Below, piece after piece: positions 3,252 through 62,252 of a stretch of 64,000 bases of DNA (positions within the stretch are counted from its first letter, which is position 1; each line of letters begins with the position of its first letter). The translations under genes were made by a program, and so were the position numbers. Below the pieces are notes generated by a model, which saw nothing but the letters and a program-made list of their open reading frames with translations, was not told the DNA's origin and ran no database searches. The stretch covers positions 124,001 to 188,000 of the IMG/VR virus record IMGVR_UViG_3300041411_000129. The stretch is one strand, 5' to 3'.

Positions 3252-3292
3252 ACGGGGAGCTTCGGCTCCCTGCTGTCCTACTTCTTTTTTTT
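3252..3292 (+). terminator. Intrinsic terminator
   Basis: GGGAGC-TTCG-GCTCCC hairpin, then a T tract. Confidence 0.75.
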
Positions 3293-4313: not shown

Positions 4314-4338
4314 GACAGGGAGCTTCGGCTCCCTTGTC
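4314..4338 (+). terminator. Hairpin (likely terminator)
   Basis: GACAGGGAGC-TTCG-GCTCCCTTGTC. Confidence 0.6.
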
Positions 4339-4352
4339 TCTAGGAGTTTTTT

Positions 4353-9710: not shown

Positions 9711-11303
9711 ATGGAACTTGTTAAACTTATCTTCGTGGAAACTGAAGGCAGCGACACTCCAGTCATTCGTCCTTACGAAACCACGCTGAAGAAAGACGAC
9801 CTCGATCTCTTCGCCAAGGCTACCGATGACGGCTCGAACCTGAGCACCATTCGCCTGGCCAAGGTTGTAGCGCCACTCCTCGGTCCATCGAACCGTCGTC
9901 AACACAAGTCCCACATCAGCAATGGTTGGGATACTACTCGGATCATGTTCGGGATGGTTGTTAAGGTGATGAACCGTGACAACGCCAGTACCTACGAATA
10001 TATCGTGGGTTATACCGATCACAGCGAACACGCCCGTCGTGGCGATAACGCGAAGTTCGATGCTGGCATGAAGATGTATTTCAACAACATCACGCGGGTT
10101 CACATGCAGGAATCCCGTCACCGCGATAGCAATATCTGGGTGCCGAAGATCCAAGCGCATGACCAGATCCTGCTTCGCTCCAGCCTGACTGGTTCTGATC
10201 GTGGCACTGCCCGTGGCGGCGATCGTCCAGTTACTCTGCGTCCTACCGACTTGTTCAAACGTGGTGGTGCAGATGCGGCATTCGGTTCGTTCATGCGTGA
10301 TAACGACAGTAATGTCAACAACACCGTTGGTTCGTTCAGCTCGGCAATCCGTGCATCGAACGTTGTCAACAATAGCCAGACCGCTTACGCGGCCCGTAAC
10401 CTGAATGCGTGGATGCAGGCGAGCAACTCGCCTAACGATGCGTACGTCGGTGACGGTAATGATGAAGACACCATCCAGGCAACTTCTGATCGGTTGGCAG
10501 AGAACTCTCTGGAACTCGATCCGTATCTGGAGCGTATCAAGCGCGACACCAACATTCTCCGTGAAGGTTGCATTACTTTCGGCGAACTGATGGACATGAA
10601 CGAAGACTTCGATGAAGATCGTCAGTTGATGTTCGTTCCGTTGGACAAGCGTAAGCGCGGTGGTTTCATCAATAACTCCGCTTGGGGTGAAGATACCAAC
10701 GAGGCGATTGCAGCGACCATCATCGCAAACTCCCTGCCTGGCATTCTGATCAATTCGATGTATTCGTCTGTGTCTGGTCTGGTGCTGAACAGTCGTGCCC
10801 GCTTCGGCGAGTACAAAGTAGTTTGCTCTGAGCCAACTCCGTTTGCTCCAGGTATGTCGGTTAAGGCGAACTGGCCGTACTTCGAAAGTCAGATCGAACA
10901 CGTTCTGATGGAAGAAGTTGGTTGTGGTGGTGCGTTTGAGTTCGAAGCGTACATCGACGCGAACATCGACCAGTTCATCAAGATCCGTATCCGGATGGAC
11001 GGTGGTGAAGAAGCATCGTTCAACTTCCCAGCGTATGCGTCCAGTCTTCTGGCGCCTACTCAGGATAAAGACTTCAAGTCGCTCGATCGGATGTCGAAAG
11101 GCGTTATCGATCTGGCCTCTGGTCTGTCGAACATGCGGATGTCGCGCTCTGGCGTTGGGGCTCGTGAAGACGGCCTGAACACTGGCAGTGAAAGTCGCAT
11201 CAATCTGGCTCCAAGCAGTAAAGAGTCGCGTCCTCGGGATAACGATTACAGAGCCGCTCCAGCAGCAGCCTCTGGCGAACGTAAAGGTGGTAAGGGCTGG
11301 TAA
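9711..11303 (+). CDS. picA: PicA/Imp1-like nuclear-shell protein import factor (phiKZ gp69-like)
   Basis: 530 aa; N-terminal IRPYET and GW...R-x-x-F...Y-x-x-GYTD pattern; synteny between gp68-like and gp70-like genes. Confidence 0.75.
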   Translation: MELVKLIFVETEGSDTPVIRPYETTLKKDDLDLFAKATDDGSNLSTIRLAKVVAPLLGPSNRRQHKSHISNGWDTTRIMFGMVVKVMNRDNASTYEYIVGYTDHSEHARRGDNAKFDAGMKMYFNNITRVHMQESRHRDSNIWVPKIQAHDQILLRSSLTGSDRGTARGGDRPVTLRPTDLFKRGGADAAFGSFMRDNDSNVNNTVGSFSSAIRASNVVNNSQTAYAARNLNAWMQASNSPNDAYVGDGNDEDTIQATSDRLAENSLELDPYLERIKRDTNILREGCITFGELMDMNEDFDEDRQLMFVPLDKRKRGGFINNSAWGEDTNEAIAATIIANSLPGILINSMYSSVSGLVLNSRARFGEYKVVCSEPTPFAPGMSVKANWPYFESQIEHVLMEEVGCGGAFEFEAYIDANIDQFIKIRIRMDGGEEASFNFPAYASSLLAPTQDKDFKSLDRMSKGVIDLASGLSNMRMSRSGVGAREDGLNTGSESRINLAPSSKESRPRDNDYRAAPAAASGERKGGKGW

Positions 11304-11343
11304 AGCCCTTTTCACAAACCCCTATTAATGACCACGGGAATTA

Positions 11344-12609
11344 GTGATGAGTGGAAGTAAGCTCGATCGAATGAATGACTTCAACCGAAAGGTCCTACTT
11401 GACGTAGGGGTTTTCGAAGAAGAAGTAGATGACGGCCATCTGTCCTACCTTAAGGACGGTAAGCCATCTCCAGTGACCCTGAACAAGACTCGTCTGTGCA
11501 TCACCGTACAGCGGATCTTGAAAGAAGGCCTGGGTGAAGAACGTACTGGGTTCCATCCCCTTGCTGAACAGATCACCGAAGGTCCAAGTCCTGTACTGAA
11601 CGCCTTCAAGAACTACGTCGGTGAGCGCATCAAGGCAACGGTTCGCCATATCGGCCTGTCGTTGATGGAACTGGCATCCGACTCCAAGCGCCACAAAGGC
11701 ATGTCTGCCAAGGCTTCCAAGTATCTGACCGCTCTGGCAGGTATTGGTGAAGTCGATGAAAAGACTGTCGATACCATGCGCAAGGTGTTCGATGCTGTCA
11801 GTCAGGTTCCTGAGAAGCACCTGATTACCATTATCCTGAAAGCCAAGACCGACGACGGCAGTCTGCGTCAATCGGTTGTAACCTTCCCGATCATGGATGA
11901 AGCCGATAGCGAAGAAACCGAAACCTTCTTTGGCGTGAAGATGCCACGGAAGACCAAGGACAAAGCGCTGATTGTATCGGTTCTCGAATACATCCTGGGC
12001 GACGAGCCAGCTCGCAAGATGTACACCTCCGGCAGTAAGAATGGCAACTCGCCGTACTTCCACAGCCTGCTGTTGTCCTTCCACAAGCTGGCAACTCGAT
12101 TGAACGACATCCTCACCGTACATGCGCCTAAGTGCCCATCGTTCGAAGAGCTGAAGTTCAATCTGGACTGGAGCGATGAACTCGATAACTTCGACGACTT
12201 CGCCAAGGTTTGCAGCCGAGCAGTTCCTGCTCTGCCGGGTAATACCGGTAAGGAAATCGAAGAAGAACGTTCTGCGTTCGAAGCAAGTGCGAGTGATGTT
12301 GGTGCCGATGATGATCTGCCGTGGAATGAACCTAAAGCCAAACTCACCATCGGTAGCGATGACGAGAAGCGTCCGGCTGCTGGTTCGAGTTTCCGCGACA
12401 CTGTCAACAGCTCTCGTTCGAGCCGTGATCGTGATGATGATCGCTCGGATAGCCGTTCGAATCATGGAAGCTTCCGTGACTTGATGGGCGGTAAGGGTCG
12501 TGACCGCGATCGTGACGATCGTGATAGCCGTCGTGAAAGCCCAAGCTGGCGTTCAGGGCGTGATCGTGATGATCGTGACCGTGGTGGTCGCGGCGGCCGC
12601 GGCTGGTAA
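11344..12609 (+). CDS. phiKZ gp70-like nucleus-associated protein with an RD/RGG-rich tail
   Basis: GFHPLAEQITEGPSPVL block; follows PicA. Confidence 0.75.
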   Translation: MMSGSKLDRMNDFNRKVLLDVGVFEEEVDDGHLSYLKDGKPSPVTLNKTRLCITVQRILKEGLGEERTGFHPLAEQITEGPSPVLNAFKNYVGERIKATVRHIGLSLMELASDSKRHKGMSAKASKYLTALAGIGEVDEKTVDTMRKVFDAVSQVPEKHLITIILKAKTDDGSLRQSVVTFPIMDEADSEETETFFGVKMPRKTKDKALIVSVLEYILGDEPARKMYTSGSKNGNSPYFHSLLLSFHKLATRLNDILTVHAPKCPSFEELKFNLDWSDELDNFDDFAKVCSRAVPALPGNTGKEIEEERSAFEASASDVGADDDLPWNEPKAKLTIGSDDEKRPAAGSSFRDTVNSSRSSRDRDDDRSDSRSNHGSFRDLMGGKGRDRDRDDRDSRRESPSWRSGRDRDDRDRGGRGGRGW

Positions 12610-20096: not shown

Positions 20097-20141
20097 CATA
20101 AAGCCCGGCATTGAGCCGGGCTTTATGTCACTCTTTTTTTT
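20097..20141. terminator. Bidirectional terminator at a convergent junction
   Basis: CATAAAGCCCGGC-ATTGA-GCCGGGCTTTATG, then a T run. Confidence 0.85.
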
Positions 20142-21922: not shown

Positions 21923-23209
21923 TTAGTTCCTAAGGAATGTCTCTAAGAAGAGAGGAGTTGTTTTGAGTTCTTTAGCGTGAGCGGAACCCATCATTACGGC
22001 CATCATCGTGGAAGGGATCTCACCTACCATCGAACCGATGGAATCAGGATAAGCCGACAGCTTGTCACCGAAACACACCTCACAGCAGTCTGTGCGTGGA
22101 GTGATACAGAACGCCGGGCTGAACATAGGGTACATCTTACCCAAGTACTGACCGATGTTTTCGGCAGACAACTTAACCGACTCTTTACCGTCAACGATGG
22201 TGCGGCCAATGAGGTCTTCACTGACTTCGATATCGAGCTGATCGGTAGTACCGCAGAAGCCCTTAACTACACGAGCGTTCTGGAAGATACGACCCATCAA
22301 GTCCACGTCCTCACCAGCGAGTGCGGTCATCGCACCACGGAAGTAAGAACCAGCACGTAGCGAGTTCACCATGTGGGGGAACTTGGTTACGTCCAGACCT
22401 TCTTGAAGAGAAGTAGTAACGAGCGTTGCACGACCACCTTCTTCAAATCCAGCTTCAGGTCCGTGGATCTGGAACATTCGTTTCAAAGCAGTGTTCAAGG
22501 ATTTACGTTTGTACAGGAAGCCTTCAGACGGATCACCCTTGAGGTTATCCGAATAGTCCTTGACCAGAGCATCCTGAATACGCGCTTGGATAACCGGGTC
22601 ATCCAATTGATCCTTATACAGCTCCAGCATTTCCTTCAGGATCTTATCCCGATTAGGAGACGGCTGAAGAGCATGCTCAGTAACGGATGGAACGAACATC
22701 TCGTAACCGGCTATGTCAGACACAGCCTTGCCGAAGCGTAGGTAATGCCGAACGTAGATCACGCCTGGCTTTTCTGGTACTTCGTTATCCACCATCGCAC
22801 CGATGATGAAACGCTCCAGACCACCTAGGTCGATTGGACCTTCAGCGTATTTAAACAGATCACCCCCGGCGTAAACCAGAACACGACTGTTGAATAGCAA
22901 GTCACCCCAAGTACCGTCAGGGAGATCCTTATCCAGATTCTCCACGTCACCAGCCTTGATAGGACCGCAGGAGTCGTGATAGATGTACGGGATCTCGTAA
23001 GGCTTAGCGTCCTGTAGGACCTGCCAGCTCCACTCACCCTTATCGTCCGGTACGTATACCTGAACGTTTTCCTTCGTGTGCTTCAAGCCCCACTTGAGAT
23101 CACCGTTCTTAACGTCGTCGATAACGACGGAGAAGGCACGCAAGATCCACGCTCGATTATAATGGACCTTTGCCTTCATCGATTGGATAAAGAAATCATA
23201 CTTCCGCAT
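21923..23209 (-). CDS. Virion RNA polymerase beta' middle subunit (phiKZ gp80-like)
   Basis: SL-x-EG, bridge-helix-like NSLRAGSYFRGAMTALAGE, FCGT and C...CCEVCFG Zn site. Confidence 0.85.
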   Translation of the reverse strand: MRKYDFFIQSMKAKVHYNRAWILRAFSVVIDDVKNGDLKWGLKHTKENVQVYVPDDKGEWSWQVLQDAKPYEIPYIYHDSCGPIKAGDVENLDKDLPDGTWGDLLFNSRVLVYAGGDLFKYAEGPIDLGGLERFIIGAMVDNEVPEKPGVIYVRHYLRFGKAVSDIAGYEMFVPSVTEHALQPSPNRDKILKEMLELYKDQLDDPVIQARIQDALVKDYSDNLKGDPSEGFLYKRKSLNTALKRMFQIHGPEAGFEEGGRATLVTTSLQEGLDVTKFPHMVNSLRAGSYFRGAMTALAGEDVDLMGRIFQNARVVKGFCGTTDQLDIEVSEDLIGRTIVDGKESVKLSAENIGQYLGKMYPMFSPAFCITPRTDCCEVCFGDKLSAYPDSIGSMVGEIPSTMMAVMMGSAHAKELKTTPLFLETFLRN

Positions 23210-24119
23210 GTCCAGCTCCGAAGATGGGTTGGTATACGTCGAACAGTTTTAGTTTCACCTGTTCGGCCCGACGACGATCGTCCATCTCGTAGAATAGATC
23301 GTCGAGACAGTTACCGATAGAGATCTTGGCATCCTCGAAGCTCTCGTTAGAGATCACTGCAAGCGAGAAGATGTCATTGATAGCCTCATCCATTGGCTTA
23401 TCGATCAAACGCCCCACAGCCAAGCCGTAGAGTGCTTCCATCGACACACCGAGACCCTCATCGTTACTGCCCATCTCTGCGCCGATCGAGTCTTTGTTAG
23501 TTTTCACCAGACGGGACAATCGTTTGAGTAATTCACCGTCACGAGTGCTAGTGATTTCATTTACGTTGTCAGCGGTGACGGCGGCCTTACATACACGCCT
23601 CACGTTCTTCGTGAAGTTGTCATGGATCTCGAGGATCTGCTCTTGAAGCAGGTCTTCGGAGTAAGTGCCCAATTGTGCCACGAGTTTGATGAACGCTTCA
23701 TCGACATCTTCAGCAGAATCGAGAAGGTCTACAAGGATAGTGGGCGTATCCGTTGGGTCGAAGTTTACGATGATCTCGTAGACCTCAGCCAACATGGCGA
23801 TAGGGATGTCTGGCGACAATTCCACACCGCAAATATTCAGGGACGTTTCAGCTGCAATGCGCAGCACTTCATCGAGACTGGAGACGATCTCCGTCGGATC
23901 GATGTTCTGATCGTTCAACTTAGAGAACAGTAAATCCATCTCGTCGAGATGGCTGGTCGTGTTGGATTTGATCAGGGACTTGTTCAGATTAACGTAGATC
24001 TCTTCAAGCTCTGGAGAGCAGCGATCCCGAGCGAGTGTCCGCACTGATAGTTCTGTGACGAAATCATCGTCGGCCTGCATTGGCTTGTCCATCAAAGCCC
24101 TCCCGGTTAAACCGTACAT
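23196..24119 (-). CDS. Conserved hypothetical protein
   Basis: 307 aa, helical and acidic; overlaps the start of the vRNAP subunit gene. Confidence 0.75.
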   Translation of the reverse strand: MYGLTGRALMDKPMQADDDFVTELSVRTLARDRCSPELEEIYVNLNKSLIKSNTTSHLDEMDLLFSKLNDQNIDPTEIVSSLDEVLRIAAETSLNICGVELSPDIPIAMLAEVYEIIVNFDPTDTPTILVDLLDSAEDVDEAFIKLVAQLGTYSEDLLQEQILEIHDNFTKNVRRVCKAAVTADNVNEITSTRDGELLKRLSRLVKTNKDSIGAEMGSNDEGLGVSMEALYGLAVGRLIDKPMDEAINDIFSLAVISNESFEDAKISIGNCLDDLFYEMDDRRRAEQVKLKLFDVYQPIFGAGHAEV

Positions 24120-24180: not shown

Positions 24181-24660
24181 ATGCGTAATAATAATTCCGA
24201 GCGATTCGTTGCTCACGGAAACTCGATCGAGGCTACTAATGCCGAAGTTGAGAAAGAAGTTCAGGGTTATCAAGACACTCTGGCCGTTAGTCTGAACGCT
24301 GCCATCCAGCCAGTCAAAGACCTCGCAGAGTCCATCAACGTATTGCATGCCGAAGGTCGTCAAGAGGACGTGCCTAAATTGACCGGCTTGGTGAAGATGC
24401 TCGCTCGCGACGCTGACGTGCTGCTGAAGGAAAAGAAAGAGGCTGATCAAGAACTGGAGAAACTCCGGGCTAATCCTCCGACCAAGAAGCGCCATCTGTC
24501 CAACCACCACGCCGGCCTGATGGCGGTGGGTGCTAAATACCTCGGTCTGTCCCAGCGCGCGACGAACACCGTAGGTAACATCCTCGGCGATTACATGGAC
24601 TTGATCGATCCGATCAAATCTAAACCTGCAACCGCAGAACAAAGTGAGGCTGTATCGTGA
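24181..24660 (+). CDS. Hypothetical coiled-coil protein
   Basis: 159 aa with GAGG RBS; GTGA overlap with the next gene. Confidence 0.8.
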   Translation: MRNNNSERFVAHGNSIEATNAEVEKEVQGYQDTLAVSLNAAIQPVKDLAESINVLHAEGRQEDVPKLTGLVKMLARDADVLLKEKKEADQELEKLRANPPTKKRHLSNHHAGLMAVGAKYLGLSQRATNTVGNILGDYMDLIDPIKSKPATAEQSEAVS

Positions 24661-26522
24661 GTGACGAACAGATCGTAGATCAACCTGAAGAAGAACGGCC
24701 GATCGTGCTGGAAGACCAGATCACCAAGCCGGCTGAGTTCAATCCTACTCCTGCCGATGAACCGGTCGATCTTACTCAAGCTGAGTGGGCGTCTATCGAA
24801 GAACTGCCTTCGGGCTTTGCTCACGAACCAGCTCCTGAGCATCCAGCTCAAGAAACCGGCGCTCTCGGCGATCTGTTGGCTGGCATTGCCGCCGATACAG
24901 CTGTACCGGTCAGTGAACAGATCGTGGATCTCTCCGTACCTGTTCCTGAAGCTGAAGCTGCGCCACTGCGCGAAATGGTTGGTGACTTCACGCCGAACAT
25001 GAACGTCAACGATGATCAGGGTATCCTGACCGTCCTGACTGATGTACAACTGGCCAAGTTCTCCCGCGACAACCCTTCCGTGCTGCTGTCCAACTTCTCG
25101 GCCGACGAACTGGACGTCATGTACGACCAGATCGAACGTCAAGTGGCGAACGCTCAGGAAGCTCGTGAAGAGCTCGTGAAGAATGGTGGTGGCGCTGGTC
25201 TTTACGCTGGTCGTACTGACGATGGTGAAGTGATCTACATCACCGCCAACGAAGGTAAGGCGATGGGTGCGATTGAAGACTATCGCAAGACCACCGCTCC
25301 ATTCCGTAACAACGCTGATCTCTTCGGCGATGATGACAGTGAGTGGACCAACCTTCCTAAGGTCGGTGATATTCCGATTGCTCCTGGTCGTCTGGATCAC
25401 GAGAAGTCCAAAGACCCGGTCATGCGTATCCGCGGTCGTCTGGGTATGGCTGTTGAATACACCAACCCGTTCTGGGCGTCTGGCCTGCACATGGTTATCG
25501 AAGGCGCTGGTGCGCTGGAAGAACTCTCTCTGGATCAGAAGATCCTGACTGAGAAAGCCGAAATGGGTCGTGACAGCAGCGGTTACGTTTATAGCGCTTC
25601 GGCACTGTACCTGAACCGTCCTGTGGTTGACTTCGCTCTGAGTCAAGTGCGTAGCACCACTATCGGTACTACTGATCCGCAAGTGCTGAAGAGCCTCTTG
25701 CTGATTACTGATATCGATCCGCTGGCGCTAGCAATGGCTTCTGCCAACATGCCTAACGGCTTCCTGCTGGAACGTCCTTGCTTGGAACAGGTCGGCGGTT
25801 GCGGTTTCGTTACCAAGCGTCAGGTTAACCTGCGCCGTATGCTGATGGTCCGTCGTTCGAAGCTGTCGGACGATCAGGCTCAGTTCATGAGCAAGCGTGC
25901 CGGTACTGTTGACATCAAGACTGTACTCGGCTACCAAGCCAAGATGCGTCCTGAGATCAGCCGTATCGTCAACCTGAAGGGCGGCTTGATTCTGCGCTTC
26001 AAGGTTCCTACCATCGCTGAATACGAGCGTATCGCTTCGGCATGGCTGGACTACATGGACCAACAGTCCCGTAAGGTTGCCGCCAGTAATGCTAACCAGC
26101 AAGAGCGTGAAGCGTTCCTGCTGAAGGCATCCCGCGTCTCCGTTCTGATGGCCTACGGTCACTGGATCGAAGCTGTGCTGGAAACCGATCCTGACGATCT
26201 GGCTGCTGACCCTAAGGTCATGATCGAACGCACTGGTGAAGAAGGTAGTCCTGAGCAGTACCAGTCTGACGTTCAGATGCAGCGTCTGTTGGTATCTCTG
26301 GCTGTCGATCAGGAACTGAGCGATCAGATCATCGAAGAGCTGAGCGAGTTCATCAACCAGATGACCATGTCTACACCGGTTATCCCGAAGATGAAGTGCC
26401 CGAACTGCGGTAAACAGATGCAGGGCGACGATGCGTCGAAGCACCCACACCTTGTAAACCTGAACGCCGTTGAAGTTTTTTTTACCCTACTCCGCCTCAG
26501 AATGCAAAAGCTGTCAAGCTAA
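24657..26522 (+). CDS. Conserved protein with C-terminal CxxC and FF end; candidate tail/baseplate assembly chaperone
   Basis: 621 aa; KMKCPNCGK...VEVFFTL; the T8 slippery run encodes the FF. Confidence 0.75.
   Translation: MSDEQIVDQPEEERPIVLEDQITKPAEFNPTPADEPVDLTQAEWASIEELPSGFAHEPAPEHPAQETGALGDLLAGIAADTAVPVSEQIVDLSVPVPEAEAAPLREMVGDFTPNMNVNDDQGILTVLTDVQLAKFSRDNPSVLLSNFSADELDVMYDQIERQVANAQEAREELVKNGGGAGLYAGRTDDGEVIYITANEGKAMGAIEDYRKTTAPFRNNADLFGDDDSEWTNLPKVGDIPIAPGRLDHEKSKDPVMRIRGRLGMAVEYTNPFWASGLHMVIEGAGALEELSLDQKILTEKAEMGRDSSGYVYSASALYLNRPVVDFALSQVRSTTIGTTDPQVLKSLLLITDIDPLALAMASANMPNGFLLERPCLEQVGGCGFVTKRQVNLRRMLMVRRSKLSDDQAQFMSKRAGTVDIKTVLGYQAKMRPEISRIVNLKGGLILRFKVPTIAEYERIASAWLDYMDQQSRKVAASNANQQEREAFLLKASRVSVLMAYGHWIEAVLETDPDDLAADPKVMIERTGEEGSPEQYQSDVQMQRLLVSLAVDQELSDQIIEELSEFINQMTMSTPVIPKMKCPNCGKQMQGDDASKHPHLVNLNAVEVFFTLLRLRMQKLSS
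26475..26483 (+). other. Putative -1 ribosomal slippery site (GTT TTT TTT)
   Basis: The -1 frame opens right after TGA 26471-26473 and stays open to TAG at 27001. Confidence 0.65.
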
Positions 26523-26536
26523 CTCCCAACGGCGAA

Positions 26537-27001
26537 GTGTATCACCATATCGGTCTCCATGATTTCGGTAAAGAGATTACTCCGTTCACGGAAGGTACTC
26601 CTCTGTATAACCTGATCATGGGTAAGACTGTGAAGGATGACTTCACTTCGCAGCTGATGTTCCTTGAAGCTTACGACGAAACCTTCGGTATCTTCGATCA
26701 CGCTACCTACGACCATAACGATCCAATGTCTATCATCGCGATGCATCCATCCGAGGATATGGTTACTGGGTCACGGTTGGTGTCGTATTCGAGGGAGCTG
26801 ATGGCTTGTCGTATTCCTGAGCTGACCAATAAGCCTATCGATGAGTTGATGCGATTACCCAAGTGGTATTTGGATGATCTGCTCAAAGATGGGCGTAAGG
26901 CGCGGCATCGGGAAGATGCTGAAGTGGAGAAGATGCAAAACGATCTTAAGGCTAGTGCAGAAGCTGCGGCTAATCGTACTCAAGGGAACGAGCAGCCGTA
27001 G
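26537..27001 (+). CDS. Hypothetical protein; probably the C-terminal extension of the upstream gene via -1 frameshift
   Basis: GTG start without a clear RBS; frame is open upstream to the slippery run. Confidence 0.7.
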   Translation: MYHHIGLHDFGKEITPFTEGTPLYNLIMGKTVKDDFTSQLMFLEAYDETFGIFDHATYDHNDPMSIIAMHPSEDMVTGSRLVSYSRELMACRIPELTNKPIDELMRLPKWYLDDLLKDGRKARHREDAEVEKMQNDLKASAEAAANRTQGNEQP

Positions 27002-27004
27002 ACA

Positions 27005-27038
27005 GCATAAAGGGCGGGGTAATCCCCGCCCTTTATGC
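27005..27038. terminator. Bidirectional terminator (perfect 15-bp inverted repeat)
   Basis: GCATAAAGGGCGGGG-TAAT-CCCCGCCCTTTATGC. Confidence 0.85.
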
Positions 27039-48530: not shown

Positions 48531-48577
48531 CATAAAGCCCGGCATTACGCCGGGCTTTATGCTCACTCTTTTTTTTT
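48531..48577. terminator. Bidirectional terminator at a convergent junction
   Basis: CATAAAGCCCGGC-ATTAC-GCCGGGCTTTATG plus a T run; near-identical to 20097-20141. Confidence 0.85.
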
Positions 48578-56713: not shown

Positions 56714-56756
56714 GTGAGGGTGGCCCAGCCACCCTCATTGTTAATCTTTTTTTTTT
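56714..56756 (+). terminator. Intrinsic terminator
   Basis: TGAGGGTGG-CCCAG-CCACCCTCA, then a T-rich tract ending in T10. Confidence 0.75.
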
Positions 56757-62214: not shown

Positions 62215-62252
62215 CGCCGGGGCTTTCCCCGGCGTAACTATCAACCTTTTTT
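62215..62252 (+). terminator. Intrinsic terminator
   Basis: CGCCGGGG-CTTT-CCCCGGCG, then a T tract. Confidence 0.65.

What the first reader, a model, noticed from the sequence alone, without database searches (positions are those of the whole stretch)
26460..27001. Apparent programmed -1 frameshift fusing the 621-aa CxxC protein to the downstream ORF (lambda G/GT-like)
Seen: the 0 frame reads GTT TTT TTT ACC (V-F-F-T) over a T8 run at 26476-26483 and stops at 26522. The -1 frame has a TGA at 26471, immediately before the run, and is then open (FFYPTPPQNAKAVKLTPNGEVYHHIG...) into ORF 26537-27001, whose GTG start lacks a clear RBS. Known: conserved -1 frameshifts produce tail assembly chaperone pairs (lambda gpG/gpGT), and T TTT TTT fits the X XXY YYZ slippery consensus. 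Inference: two products (621 aa and about 780 aa) act as a tail/baseplate assembly chaperone pair, here far from any tail-tube or tape-measure gene.
Basis: partly seen in the sequence, partly recalled or inferred. Interest (0 to 1): 0.75.

Follow-up and report, generated by a model that had tools for sequence, protein, structure and literature searches.

The report
Conserved -1 frameshift in gp26-like gene
A run of eight T's near the end of a jumbo-phage gene distantly related to the T4 baseplate-hub assembly chaperone gp26 is a slippery site kept in all 99 relatives examined (including phiKZ gp77), where some ribosomes most likely slip back one base, so the gene yields a 621-residue and a 781-residue protein; none of the 19 database records inspected annotates this, and no report was found in the searchable literature.

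Summary
T8 lies at 26476-26483 and the 0-frame ORF 24657-26522 reads GTT TTT TTT ACC. A -1-frame TGA sits at 26471, and the -1 frame is then open to 27001. Four separate metagenome runs assemble the same T8, so it is not an error.

Comparison settles what it is. All 99 orthologous loci checked (IMG/VR contigs plus phiKZ, PhiPA3, 201phi2-1, SPN3US, Goslar, RAY, PCH45, Vibrio and marine phages; 19-91% identity) have a T5-T9 run at the same codons. The 0-frame stop follows 25-133 nt later. The -1 ORF is open for 149-184 codons past the run.

Among 90 unique junctions, 84 carry an in-register U_UUU_UUN heptamer. Its synonymous positions are fixed. Dual-coding constraint starts at the site. 42 of 62 loci have no possible start codon before the conserved N-terminal block of the downstream product. 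dN/dS there is 0.22 in the -1 frame only.

The upstream protein is phiKZ gp77-like, and its fold resembles T4 gp26 (hub assembly chaperone). T4 keeps the FF motif but as TTC TTT, without a frameshift.

Best reading: programmed -1 ribosomal frameshifting gives two isoforms. The site is analogous, not homologous, to lambda G/GT. No stimulatory RNA element was found and no protein-level proof exists yet.

The parts
24657..26522 (+). 0-frame ORF, 621 aa (short isoform). It is the phiKZ gp77 / PhiPA3 gp074 / 201phi2-1 gp136 ortholog (phrog_4585). The N-terminal ~225 aa are variable and acidic.
   Evidence: synteny with the virion RNAP beta subunit (21923-23209, minus) and the gp79-like gene (23196-24119, minus)
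25332..26519 (+). Conserved C-terminal domain (396 aa) with a T4 gp26-like predicted fold.
   Evidence: AF2 model pLDDT 90, pTM 0.89. BFVD Foldseek: orthologs, then T4-like 'baseplate hub assembly protein / hub subunit' entries at E 1e-7 to 1e-4, TMt 0.5-0.6. No PDB counterpart.
26397..26408 (+). CPNC (CxxC) of the CPxCG motif. With the earlier RPCx7C it forms a probable zinc-binding site. The motif is shared with the C-terminus of T4 gp26.
26477..26483 (+). Slippery heptamer U_UUU_UUU (X = 26477, P-site codon 26478-80, A-site codon 26481-83) inside the T8 run 26476-26483.
   Evidence: in-register U_UUU_UUN in 84 of 90 unique junctions, and an in-register U_UUU tetranucleotide in every one
26484..26522 (+). 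0-frame tail TLLRLRMQKLSS plus stop. With the residues just before it, it forms the last amphipathic helix of the fold. The frameshifted isoform lacks it.
   Evidence: helix 379-395 of the model; tail conserved as FFTLLxQ[RK]...
26483..27001 (+). -1-frame extension: 172 codons plus TAG (YPTPPQNAK...). A Pro-rich linker is followed by a helical domain and a long C-terminal helix (phrog_12109; phiKZ 'gp76.4' plus the unannotated gap upstream of it).
26471..26473 (+). TGA in the -1 frame immediately before the run. The -1 ORF therefore begins at the slip site and cannot be entered from further upstream.
26537..26539 (+). GTG, the only candidate independent start (rival explanation). It lies inside the conserved 'PNG-x-V...FG' block and has no SD-like sequence.
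27012..27031 (.). GC-rich hairpin (GGGCGGGG-TAAT-CCCCGCCC) right after the -1 ORF stop, between convergent genes. It probably marks the end of the transcription unit.
   Evidence: read; it did not meet the T-tail rule of the terminator scan

Best explanation
This is a programmed -1 ribosomal frameshift site in a core Chimalliviridae gene.

Most ribosomes read GUU UUU UUU ACC in frame and stop 13 codons later. That gives a 621-aa protein whose last residues complete a C-terminal amphipathic helix of a T4 gp26-like fold. A fraction of ribosomes slip back one base, with tRNA-Phe re-pairing UUU to UUU on the U_UUU_UUU heptamer at 26477-26483. They then read UAC CCU ... and continue for 172 codons, giving a 781-aa isoform. 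In that isoform the terminal helix is replaced by a Pro-rich linker, a ~150-aa helical domain and a long C-terminal helix.

Shown: the signal and both reading frames are conserved and under selection across the family, and the downstream part usually has no start codon of its own.

Inferred: slippage is ribosomal, its efficiency is unknown, and the two isoforms act together in baseplate-hub assembly. In this picture the short form is the bulk chaperone and the long form carries an extra binding or oligomerisation module, as in other phage frameshift pairs.
For: (1) 99/99 loci at 19-91% identity have a T5-T9 run at the same codons. The 0-frame stop follows 25-133 nt later and the -1 ORF runs 149-184 codons past the run. 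The +1 frame closes after a median of 10 codons.
(2) Register: of 77 unique IMG/VR and window junctions, 41 are T_TTT_TTT, 28 T_TTT_TTC and 3 T_TTT_TTG. 12 of 13 further isolates are canonical.
(3) Synonymous constraint: the third base of the preceding V/T/L/I/A codon is T in 73/77, and Phe1 is TTT in 77/77, although TTT is a minority Phe codon (median 33%, 24% in the window).
(4) Dual coding begins at the site: the third base of the variable next 0-frame codon is C in 67/77, which preserves a -1-frame Pro (FF[Y/H/R]P).
(5) 42/62 loci have no ATG/GTG/TTG, and 55/62 no ATG, between the site and the near-invariant Phe of the conserved HVxxxxFG block. L060 and L066 have none until codon 138 and 154.
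(6) For the 24 codons after the 0-frame stop, dN/dS is 0.22 in the -1 frame against 1.2-1.3 in the other frames.
(7) The downstream domain has 1731 cluster representatives. The top 150 are all 105-191 aa with ragged called N-termini (profile positions 2-59), and none is an in-frame fusion.
(8) Minimal heptamer-only sites (T6, xxT TTT TTC) occur in 11 loci (7 IMG/VR contigs plus VP4B, PDCC-1, C-ZP2022 and N1M2), and TTC is tolerated at the Z position. This fits ribosomal slippage better than run-length-dependent RNA polymerase slippage.
(9) Outgroup: T4 gp26 keeps the FF motif as TTC TTT and has no frameshift.
(10) The T8 is reproduced in four runs.
Against: There is no direct evidence of the fusion protein: no MS, ribosome profiling or RNA data could be obtained, and no RNA run was listed.

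No stimulatory element was detected. Downstream folding z-scores equal those of control segments (median -0.47 vs -0.40, p = 0.92; window z = -0.18), and there is no positioned SD-like motif upstream.

Six junctions are not canonical heptamers: 4 are xxG TTT TTT and 2 are CTT TTT ATT. All still have an in-register U_UUU for P-site slippage.

In the window itself a GTG (26537) could also start a separate 154-aa protein. The loci are phylogenetically related, so the counts overstate independence.
Confidence: 0.78

Rival explanations
1. Transcriptional slippage: the phage or host RNA polymerase stutters on the T8 tract (A8 in the template) and adds one U to a fraction of mRNAs. Those transcripts encode the same 781-aa fusion by standard decoding.
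For: The signal is a homopolymer run, mostly T7-T9 (74 of 86 loci). No ribosomal stimulator was found. Chimalliviridae use their own non-canonical RNA polymerases, whose slippage behaviour is unknown. The protein product would be identical, so all the conservation evidence fits equally well.
Against: Runs as short as T5-T6 occur in 12 of 86 loci plus 5 isolates. The second Phe codon is TTC in 28/77 junctions, which shortens the run although TTT would be synonymous. What is invariant is the in-register U_UUU(_UUN), not the run length.
Confidence: 0.15
2. There is no recoding: two separate genes. The downstream ORF is translated on its own (in the window from GTG 26537, possibly by termination-reinitiation after the 0-frame stop 15 nt upstream), and the T-run merely encodes a conserved Phe-Phe.
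For: A GTG lies 15 nt after the 0-frame stop in the window. All 19 database records inspected annotate two separate CDSs and none a joined one. FF is conserved even in T4 gp26.
Against: The GTG lacks an SD and cuts into the conserved block. 42/62 loci have no start codon at all before that block, and two have none for about 140-150 codons. There is -1-frame purifying selection and dual-coding constraint upstream of any start. The heptamer's synonymous sites are fixed against codon bias. Called N-termini are ragged. T4 encodes FF as TTC TTT.
Confidence: 0.05
3. Artefact or DNA-level switch: a homopolymer sequencing or assembly error, a recent pseudogenising indel in a single 781-aa gene, or a phase-variable tract toggling between split and fused states.
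For: Homopolymers are error-prone and mutable, and a T9 would fuse the frames.
Against: The sequence is identical in contigs of four separate runs, two at more than 800x. 99/99 loci from independent projects need the same -1 shift despite run lengths of 5-9, which change by flanking substitutions and not by indels. No in-frame fused version appears among the loci or the top 150 protein representatives. The 0-frame tail is itself conserved and completes the predicted fold.
Confidence: 0.02

Closest known systems
Lambda gpG/gpGT and the conserved tail-assembly-chaperone frameshift of long-tailed phages (also P2 E/E+E') (from established knowledge)
   Same: A -1 slip on a heptamer near the 3' end of an assembly-chaperone gene. 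It gives an abundant short form and a rarer C-terminally extended form. The signal is conserved across very divergent phages. The downstream ORF has no proper start.
   Different: No sequence or fold relation, and no Pfam TAC hit. The upstream protein is 490-720 aa rather than ~100-150 aa. The gene lies next to virion RNA polymerase genes, not between tail-tube and tape-measure genes. The fold link is to the hub chaperone gp26, not to tail-tube chaperones.
T4 gp26 / gp26' (baseplate hub assembly chaperone; Pfam PF12322, which also holds gp51)
   Same: Predicted fold similarity to T4-like gp26 proteins. Shared C-terminal CPxCG...FFxLL motif. Absent from the solved virion structures searched. 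T4 gene 26 also makes two products (annotated 26').
   Different: No family member reaches PF12322 by sequence, and hhalign is only weak (E ~1e-3, probability 22%). The T4 protein is 208 aa and ends 3 residues after FF. T4 obtains its second product by internal initiation, not frameshifting. T4 FF is TTC TTT with gene 25 coupled at TAATG.
T7/T3 gene 10A/10B capsid frameshift (recalled, not tested here)
   Same: A phage morphogenetic gene in which a -1 slip involving tRNA-Phe on a U-rich site near the stop codon yields a minor C-terminally extended isoform.
   Different: It is a capsid protein, the extension is short (~50 aa), and it is not conserved as widely.
E. coli dnaX tau/gamma (recalled)
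   Same: A -1 PRF on a homopolymeric heptamer that sets a fixed ratio of two isoforms differing at the C-terminus.
   Different: dnaX frameshifting truncates rather than extends the protein. It depends on an upstream SD-like element and a downstream hairpin, neither of which was found here.

Membership tests
Programmed -1 ribosomal frameshift site | Slippery heptamer X_XXY_YYZ in register with the 0 frame | tested here: met
   Window: U_UUU_UUU at 26477-26483. 84 of 90 unique junctions are canonical, and all have an in-register U_UUU.
Programmed -1 ribosomal frameshift site | The signal, the open -1 frame and a coding signature in the -1 frame are conserved across orthologs | tested here: met
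   99/99 loci. Synonymous-site fixation and dual coding. dN/dS 0.22 in the -1 frame only. Start codons are missing in 42/62 loci.
Programmed -1 ribosomal frameshift site | Stimulatory element (downstream hairpin or pseudoknot, or upstream SD-like sequence) | tested here: not met
   Window z = -0.18. Family median z is -0.47 against -0.40 for controls, p = 0.92. No positioned SD-like motif. This element is not obligatory for phage PRF sites.
Programmed -1 ribosomal frameshift site | Direct detection of the trans-frame protein or of -1-frame ribosome footprints | not testable with these tools
   No RNA run was listed, and no proteomic data were accessible.
Lambda G/GT-type tail assembly chaperone pair | Homology to tail assembly chaperone families | tested here: not met
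   No Pfam hit for either part, nor for 54 and 56 family members. The PHROGs are of unknown function.
Lambda G/GT-type tail assembly chaperone pair | Position between the major tail/tube gene and the tape-measure gene | tested here: not met
   The neighbours are the virion RNAP beta subunit, gp79-like and gp78-like genes and unknown genes. Synteny is the same in phiKZ, PhiPA3, SPN3US and others.
Lambda G/GT-type tail assembly chaperone pair | Two overlapping ORFs joined by a -1 frameshift near the end of the first, with the long form a C-terminal extension | tested here: met
T4 gp26-like baseplate hub assembly protein (PF12322) | Sequence match to PF12322 | tested here: not met
   0 of 54 members hit at E <= 0.01, while T4 gp26 and gp51 hit at 1e-64 and 4e-52.
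T4 gp26-like baseplate hub assembly protein (PF12322) | Shared fold and C-terminal Cys motif followed by FFxLL | tested here: inconclusive
   BFVD Foldseek gives probability 1.0, E 1e-7 to 1e-4 and TMt 0.5-0.6 to 'baseplate hub assembly protein, T4-like' models, but TMq is ~0.4 and rmsd 6-8 A. hhalign gives E ~1e-3, probability 22%, on the CPxCG...FFxLL segment. Both sides are predicted models.
T4 gp26-like baseplate hub assembly protein (PF12322) | Required for hub/baseplate assembly; not, or barely, present in virions | not testable with these tools
   Indirect only. There is no match among solved-structure sequences. The phiKZ gp77 and 201phi2-1 gp136 records carry no 'structural' or MS note, unlike their neighbours.

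The most novel reading that the evidence does not exclude
The frameshift may be more than a fixed-ratio device. It could be a regulated recoding step specific to nucleus-forming phages. Its efficiency would be set by phage factors, either ribosome-binding proteins such as phiKZ gp014-type proteins or slippage by the phage's own non-canonical RNA polymerase. That would time or dose a long isoform that is the missing adaptor (or even a low-copy structural part) nucleating the Chimalliviridae baseplate hub. The absence of any cis stimulator and the universality of a bare U-run leave room for a trans-acting or polymerase-based mechanism.
Probability: 0.1. Interest if true: 0.85.

Novelty: new member of a known kind. 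Interest (0 to 1): 0.62.

Why it matters
Chimalliviridae (phiKZ-like, nucleus-forming jumbo phages) are intensively studied and are used in phage therapy. Even so, all 19 GenBank records inspected, including phiKZ, annotate this locus as two unrelated hypothetical genes. The downstream gene is often truncated; in phiKZ more than half of it lies in an 'intergenic' gap.

Recognising a family-wide -1 frameshift has four consequences:
- It corrects the annotation of a core gene in about 230 sequenced phages and many metagenomic contigs.
- It adds a new, very deeply conserved recoding site in a gene class where none was known to me or found in the library: a gp26-like hub chaperone rather than the classical tail-tube chaperone.
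- It gives a concrete handle on the poorly understood hub assembly of giant myoviruses, namely two isoforms with a defined junction.
- It offers a clean natural test case for bare-heptamer frameshifting, and for telling ribosomal from polymerase slippage in phages that separate transcription from translation.

Tried and rejected
- DNA-level search of the phage collection found nothing.
- Pfam gave no hits for either part or for the family members.
- PDB sequence profiles found nothing.
- Foldseek against PDB for both models, VIA wide and the ESM Atlas for the downstream domain gave no meaningful fold match.
- hhalign of the downstream domain against T4 gp51 and gp26 found nothing.
- The complex prediction of the upstream domain with the -1 domain gave 'no answer' and is not used as evidence.
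- No signal was found for a downstream RNA structure or an upstream SD-like element, in the window or across the family. No promoter or terminator lies between the ORFs beyond chance.
- For RNA sequencing runs, none was listed, so transcriptional slippage could not be tested.
- Ten full-text searches (one search was rejected for a too-short term) and the papers read found no report of this frameshift. The 'gp77' mentions there refer to other phages' genes.
They were rebuilt with permitted rows only (A4, A5).
- Rejected readings: sequencing error, pseudogene, phase variation, and independent initiation as the family-wide mechanism (see rivals).
Full report
**1. The observation**

The sequence is as described.
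- A T8 run lies at 26476-26483.
- The 621-codon ORF 24657-26522 reads GTT TTT TTT ACC across it and stops at TAA 26520-26522.
- In the -1 frame a TGA at 26471-26473 sits just before the run. The frame is then open to TAG 26999-27001 and includes the listed ORF 26537-27001.
- A slip on the run would give 609 + 172 = 781 residues.

The run is not expected by chance. The window is 51% GC, TTT is only 24% of Phe codons, and Phe-Phe is normally TTC-TTC. It is also the only T-run of 7 or more within coding sequence in the 64 kb; the other four T>=8 runs and all three T6 runs are intergenic and follow GC-rich hairpins.

It is not an assembly error. Contigs from four separate rhizosphere-metagenome runs, two at >800x word depth, match 26200-26800 without a single difference or gap. 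Some of those runs may be the source sample.

**2. What the genes are**

- The upstream protein matches phrog_4585 and the downstream product phrog_12109. Both are of unknown function and neither has a Pfam hit.
- tblastn finds the upstream protein in 221-230 phage records, all jumbo phages of the phiKZ type (hosts Pseudomonas, Erwinia, Salmonella, Serratia, Klebsiella, Ralstonia, Vibrio and others), at <30% identity.
- The orthologs are phiKZ gp77, PhiPA3 gp074 and 201phi2-1 gp136. They lie in conserved synteny with gp78, gp79 and the virion RNA polymerase subunit gp80.

**3. Comparative test of the frameshift**

I collected 99 loci: the window, 80 IMG/VR contigs and 18 isolates.

*Run and frames.* Every locus has a T-run at the homologous codons. 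In the 86-locus set the lengths are T5 x2, T6 x10, T7 x44, T8 x25 and T9 x5. The 0-frame stop follows 25-59 nt later (133 nt in PCH45). The -1 frame is open for 149-184 codons beyond the run, whereas the +1 frame closes after a median of 10 codons.

Run length varies from 5 to 9, yet the shift required is always -1. So the length changes come from flanking substitutions, not from indels.

*Register.* Among 77 unique junctions, 72 have an in-register U_UUU_UUN heptamer (41 UUU, 28 UUC, 3 UUG at the A-site codon). 12 of the 13 further isolates do too. The six exceptions (xxG TTT TTT; CTT TTT ATT) still have an in-register U_UUU.

*Nucleotide profile.*

| Position | 0-frame context | Observed |
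|---|---|---|
| Third base of the preceding codon | variable V/T/L/I/A | T in 73/77 |
| First Phe codon | Phe | TTT in 77/77 |
| Third base of the following codon | variable T/S/I/D/G | C in 67/77, which keeps a -1-frame Pro (FF[Y/H/R]P) |

Both frames are therefore constrained from the slip site onward.

*The downstream part cannot generally be made on its own.*
- In 42 of 62 diverse loci no ATG, GTG or TTG exists between the site and the near-invariant Phe of the conserved HVxxxxFG block, and 55/62 have no ATG. L060 and L066 have no such codon for 138 and 154 codons.
- The 24 codons just after the 0-frame stop have dN/dS 0.22 in the -1 frame, but 1.2-1.3 when the same bases are read in the other frames (19 pairs).
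- A profile search of 1.84 billion representatives finds 1731 relatives of the downstream domain. The best 150 are all short called ORFs (105-191 aa) whose N-termini start anywhere from profile position 2 to 59, and none is an in-frame fusion. Gene callers find no consistent start, and evolution has neither fused nor uncoupled the two parts.
- In phiKZ only the last 80 of 172 codons are annotated (gp76.4). The rest lies in a supposed intergenic gap.

**4. Mechanism**

The simplest reading is -1 ribosomal frameshifting by tRNA-Phe on U_UUU_UUN.

I found no stimulator. Folding of the 75 nt downstream is no better than control segments across the family (median z -0.47 vs -0.40, p = 0.92; window z -0.18). 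No SD-like motif is positioned upstream. No promoter or terminator separates the ORFs.

RNA-polymerase slippage would give the same protein and cannot be excluded. It is disfavoured for three reasons:
- Minimal T5-T6 sites occur.
- TTC is tolerated at the last codon, which shortens the run.
- What is invariant is the in-register U_UUU(_UUN), not the run length.

**5. Function**

*Upstream domain.* AlphaFold2 on a 54-sequence alignment gives a confident model of the conserved 396-residue upstream domain (pLDDT 90, pTM 0.89). The 0-frame tail after Phe-Phe completes its last helix, so the frameshifted isoform loses that helix.
- The fold has no PDB counterpart.
- In BFVD, after its orthologs, it matches T4-like 'baseplate hub assembly protein / hub subunit' models.
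- A profile comparison with T4 gp26 is weak (E ~1e-3). It aligns exactly the C-terminal CPxCG...FFxLL segment.
- T4 gp26 and gp51 both belong to Pfam PF12322. They are listed as hub assembly chaperones (PMC3004832).
- None of the jumbo-phage proteins reaches PF12322 by sequence, so I call this a remote, fold-level relationship.

*T4 as a control.* T4 encodes FF as TTC TTT, stops three codons later and couples gene 25 at TAATG. The FF motif is therefore ancestral and the slippery run is lineage-specific. T4 gene 26 also has a second, internally initiated product, 26'.

*Downstream domain.* The model (pLDDT 84) shows a disordered Pro-rich linker, a small helical domain and a ~40-residue terminal helix. 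It has no informative fold match. Whether it binds the upstream domain could not be judged.

*Inference.* I infer a two-isoform hub-assembly chaperone. This is functionally analogous to lambda G/GT, but it is not a member of that family.

**6. Novelty**

None of the 19 database records inspected has a joined CDS here. Ten full-text searches and the papers read gave no report of this site. Subscription literature is not covered, so 'unreported' is provisional.

**7. Verdict**

- The frameshift interpretation is supported by strong comparative evidence.
- The chaperone role is plausible but inferred.
- This is a new member of a known kind of recoding, conserved in a whole phage family.

Noticed in passing
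window 20104-20141 and 48540-48577 (also 3255-3292, 56717-56756, 287-322, 4317-4352, 62217-62252): All other T-runs of 6 or more are intergenic and follow GC-rich hairpins. Two of them share hairpin + CTTTATG[T/C]CACTC + T8/T9, which may be a terminator combined with a promoter-like TATG element. There is no A-run of 6 or more anywhere on the + strand, a striking strand asymmetry.
   Followed up: partly
L087 (phiKZ NC_004629) record 71685-71902: The annotated 'intergenic' gap between PHIKZ076.4 and PHIKZ077 is the middle of the conserved 172-codon -1 ORF. PHIKZ076.4 is only its last 80 codons. Similar truncated or arbitrarily started downstream CDSs occur in pEa_SNUABM_54, CR5, RAY (135-nt overlap) and others.
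   Followed up: yes
L099 (T4) 10803-12229: T4 gp26 and gp51 both match Pfam PF12322 strongly, so the two 'hub assembly chaperones' are paralogs. Gene 26 carries an annotated internal product, 26'.
   Followed up: partly
window 24657-25330: The N-terminal ~225 residues of the 621-aa protein are acidic, Pro/Ala/Glu-rich and not alignable between relatives. Protein length varies from 489 to 720 aa across the family, mostly in this part.
   Followed up: no
window 24181-24660: The gp78-like ORF (159 aa, no PHROG or Pfam hit) ends at 24660 and overlaps the GTG start (24657) of the frameshift gene by 4 nt, which suggests translational coupling. Its function is unknown and it is conserved in synteny in every annotated record inspected.
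   Followed up: no
window 27012-27031: A perfect 8-bp GC hairpin (GGGCGGGG-TAAT-CCCCGCCC) lies 10 nt after the -1 ORF stop, between convergent genes. It is followed by TTTATG, the same motif seen after the other hairpins.
   Followed up: no
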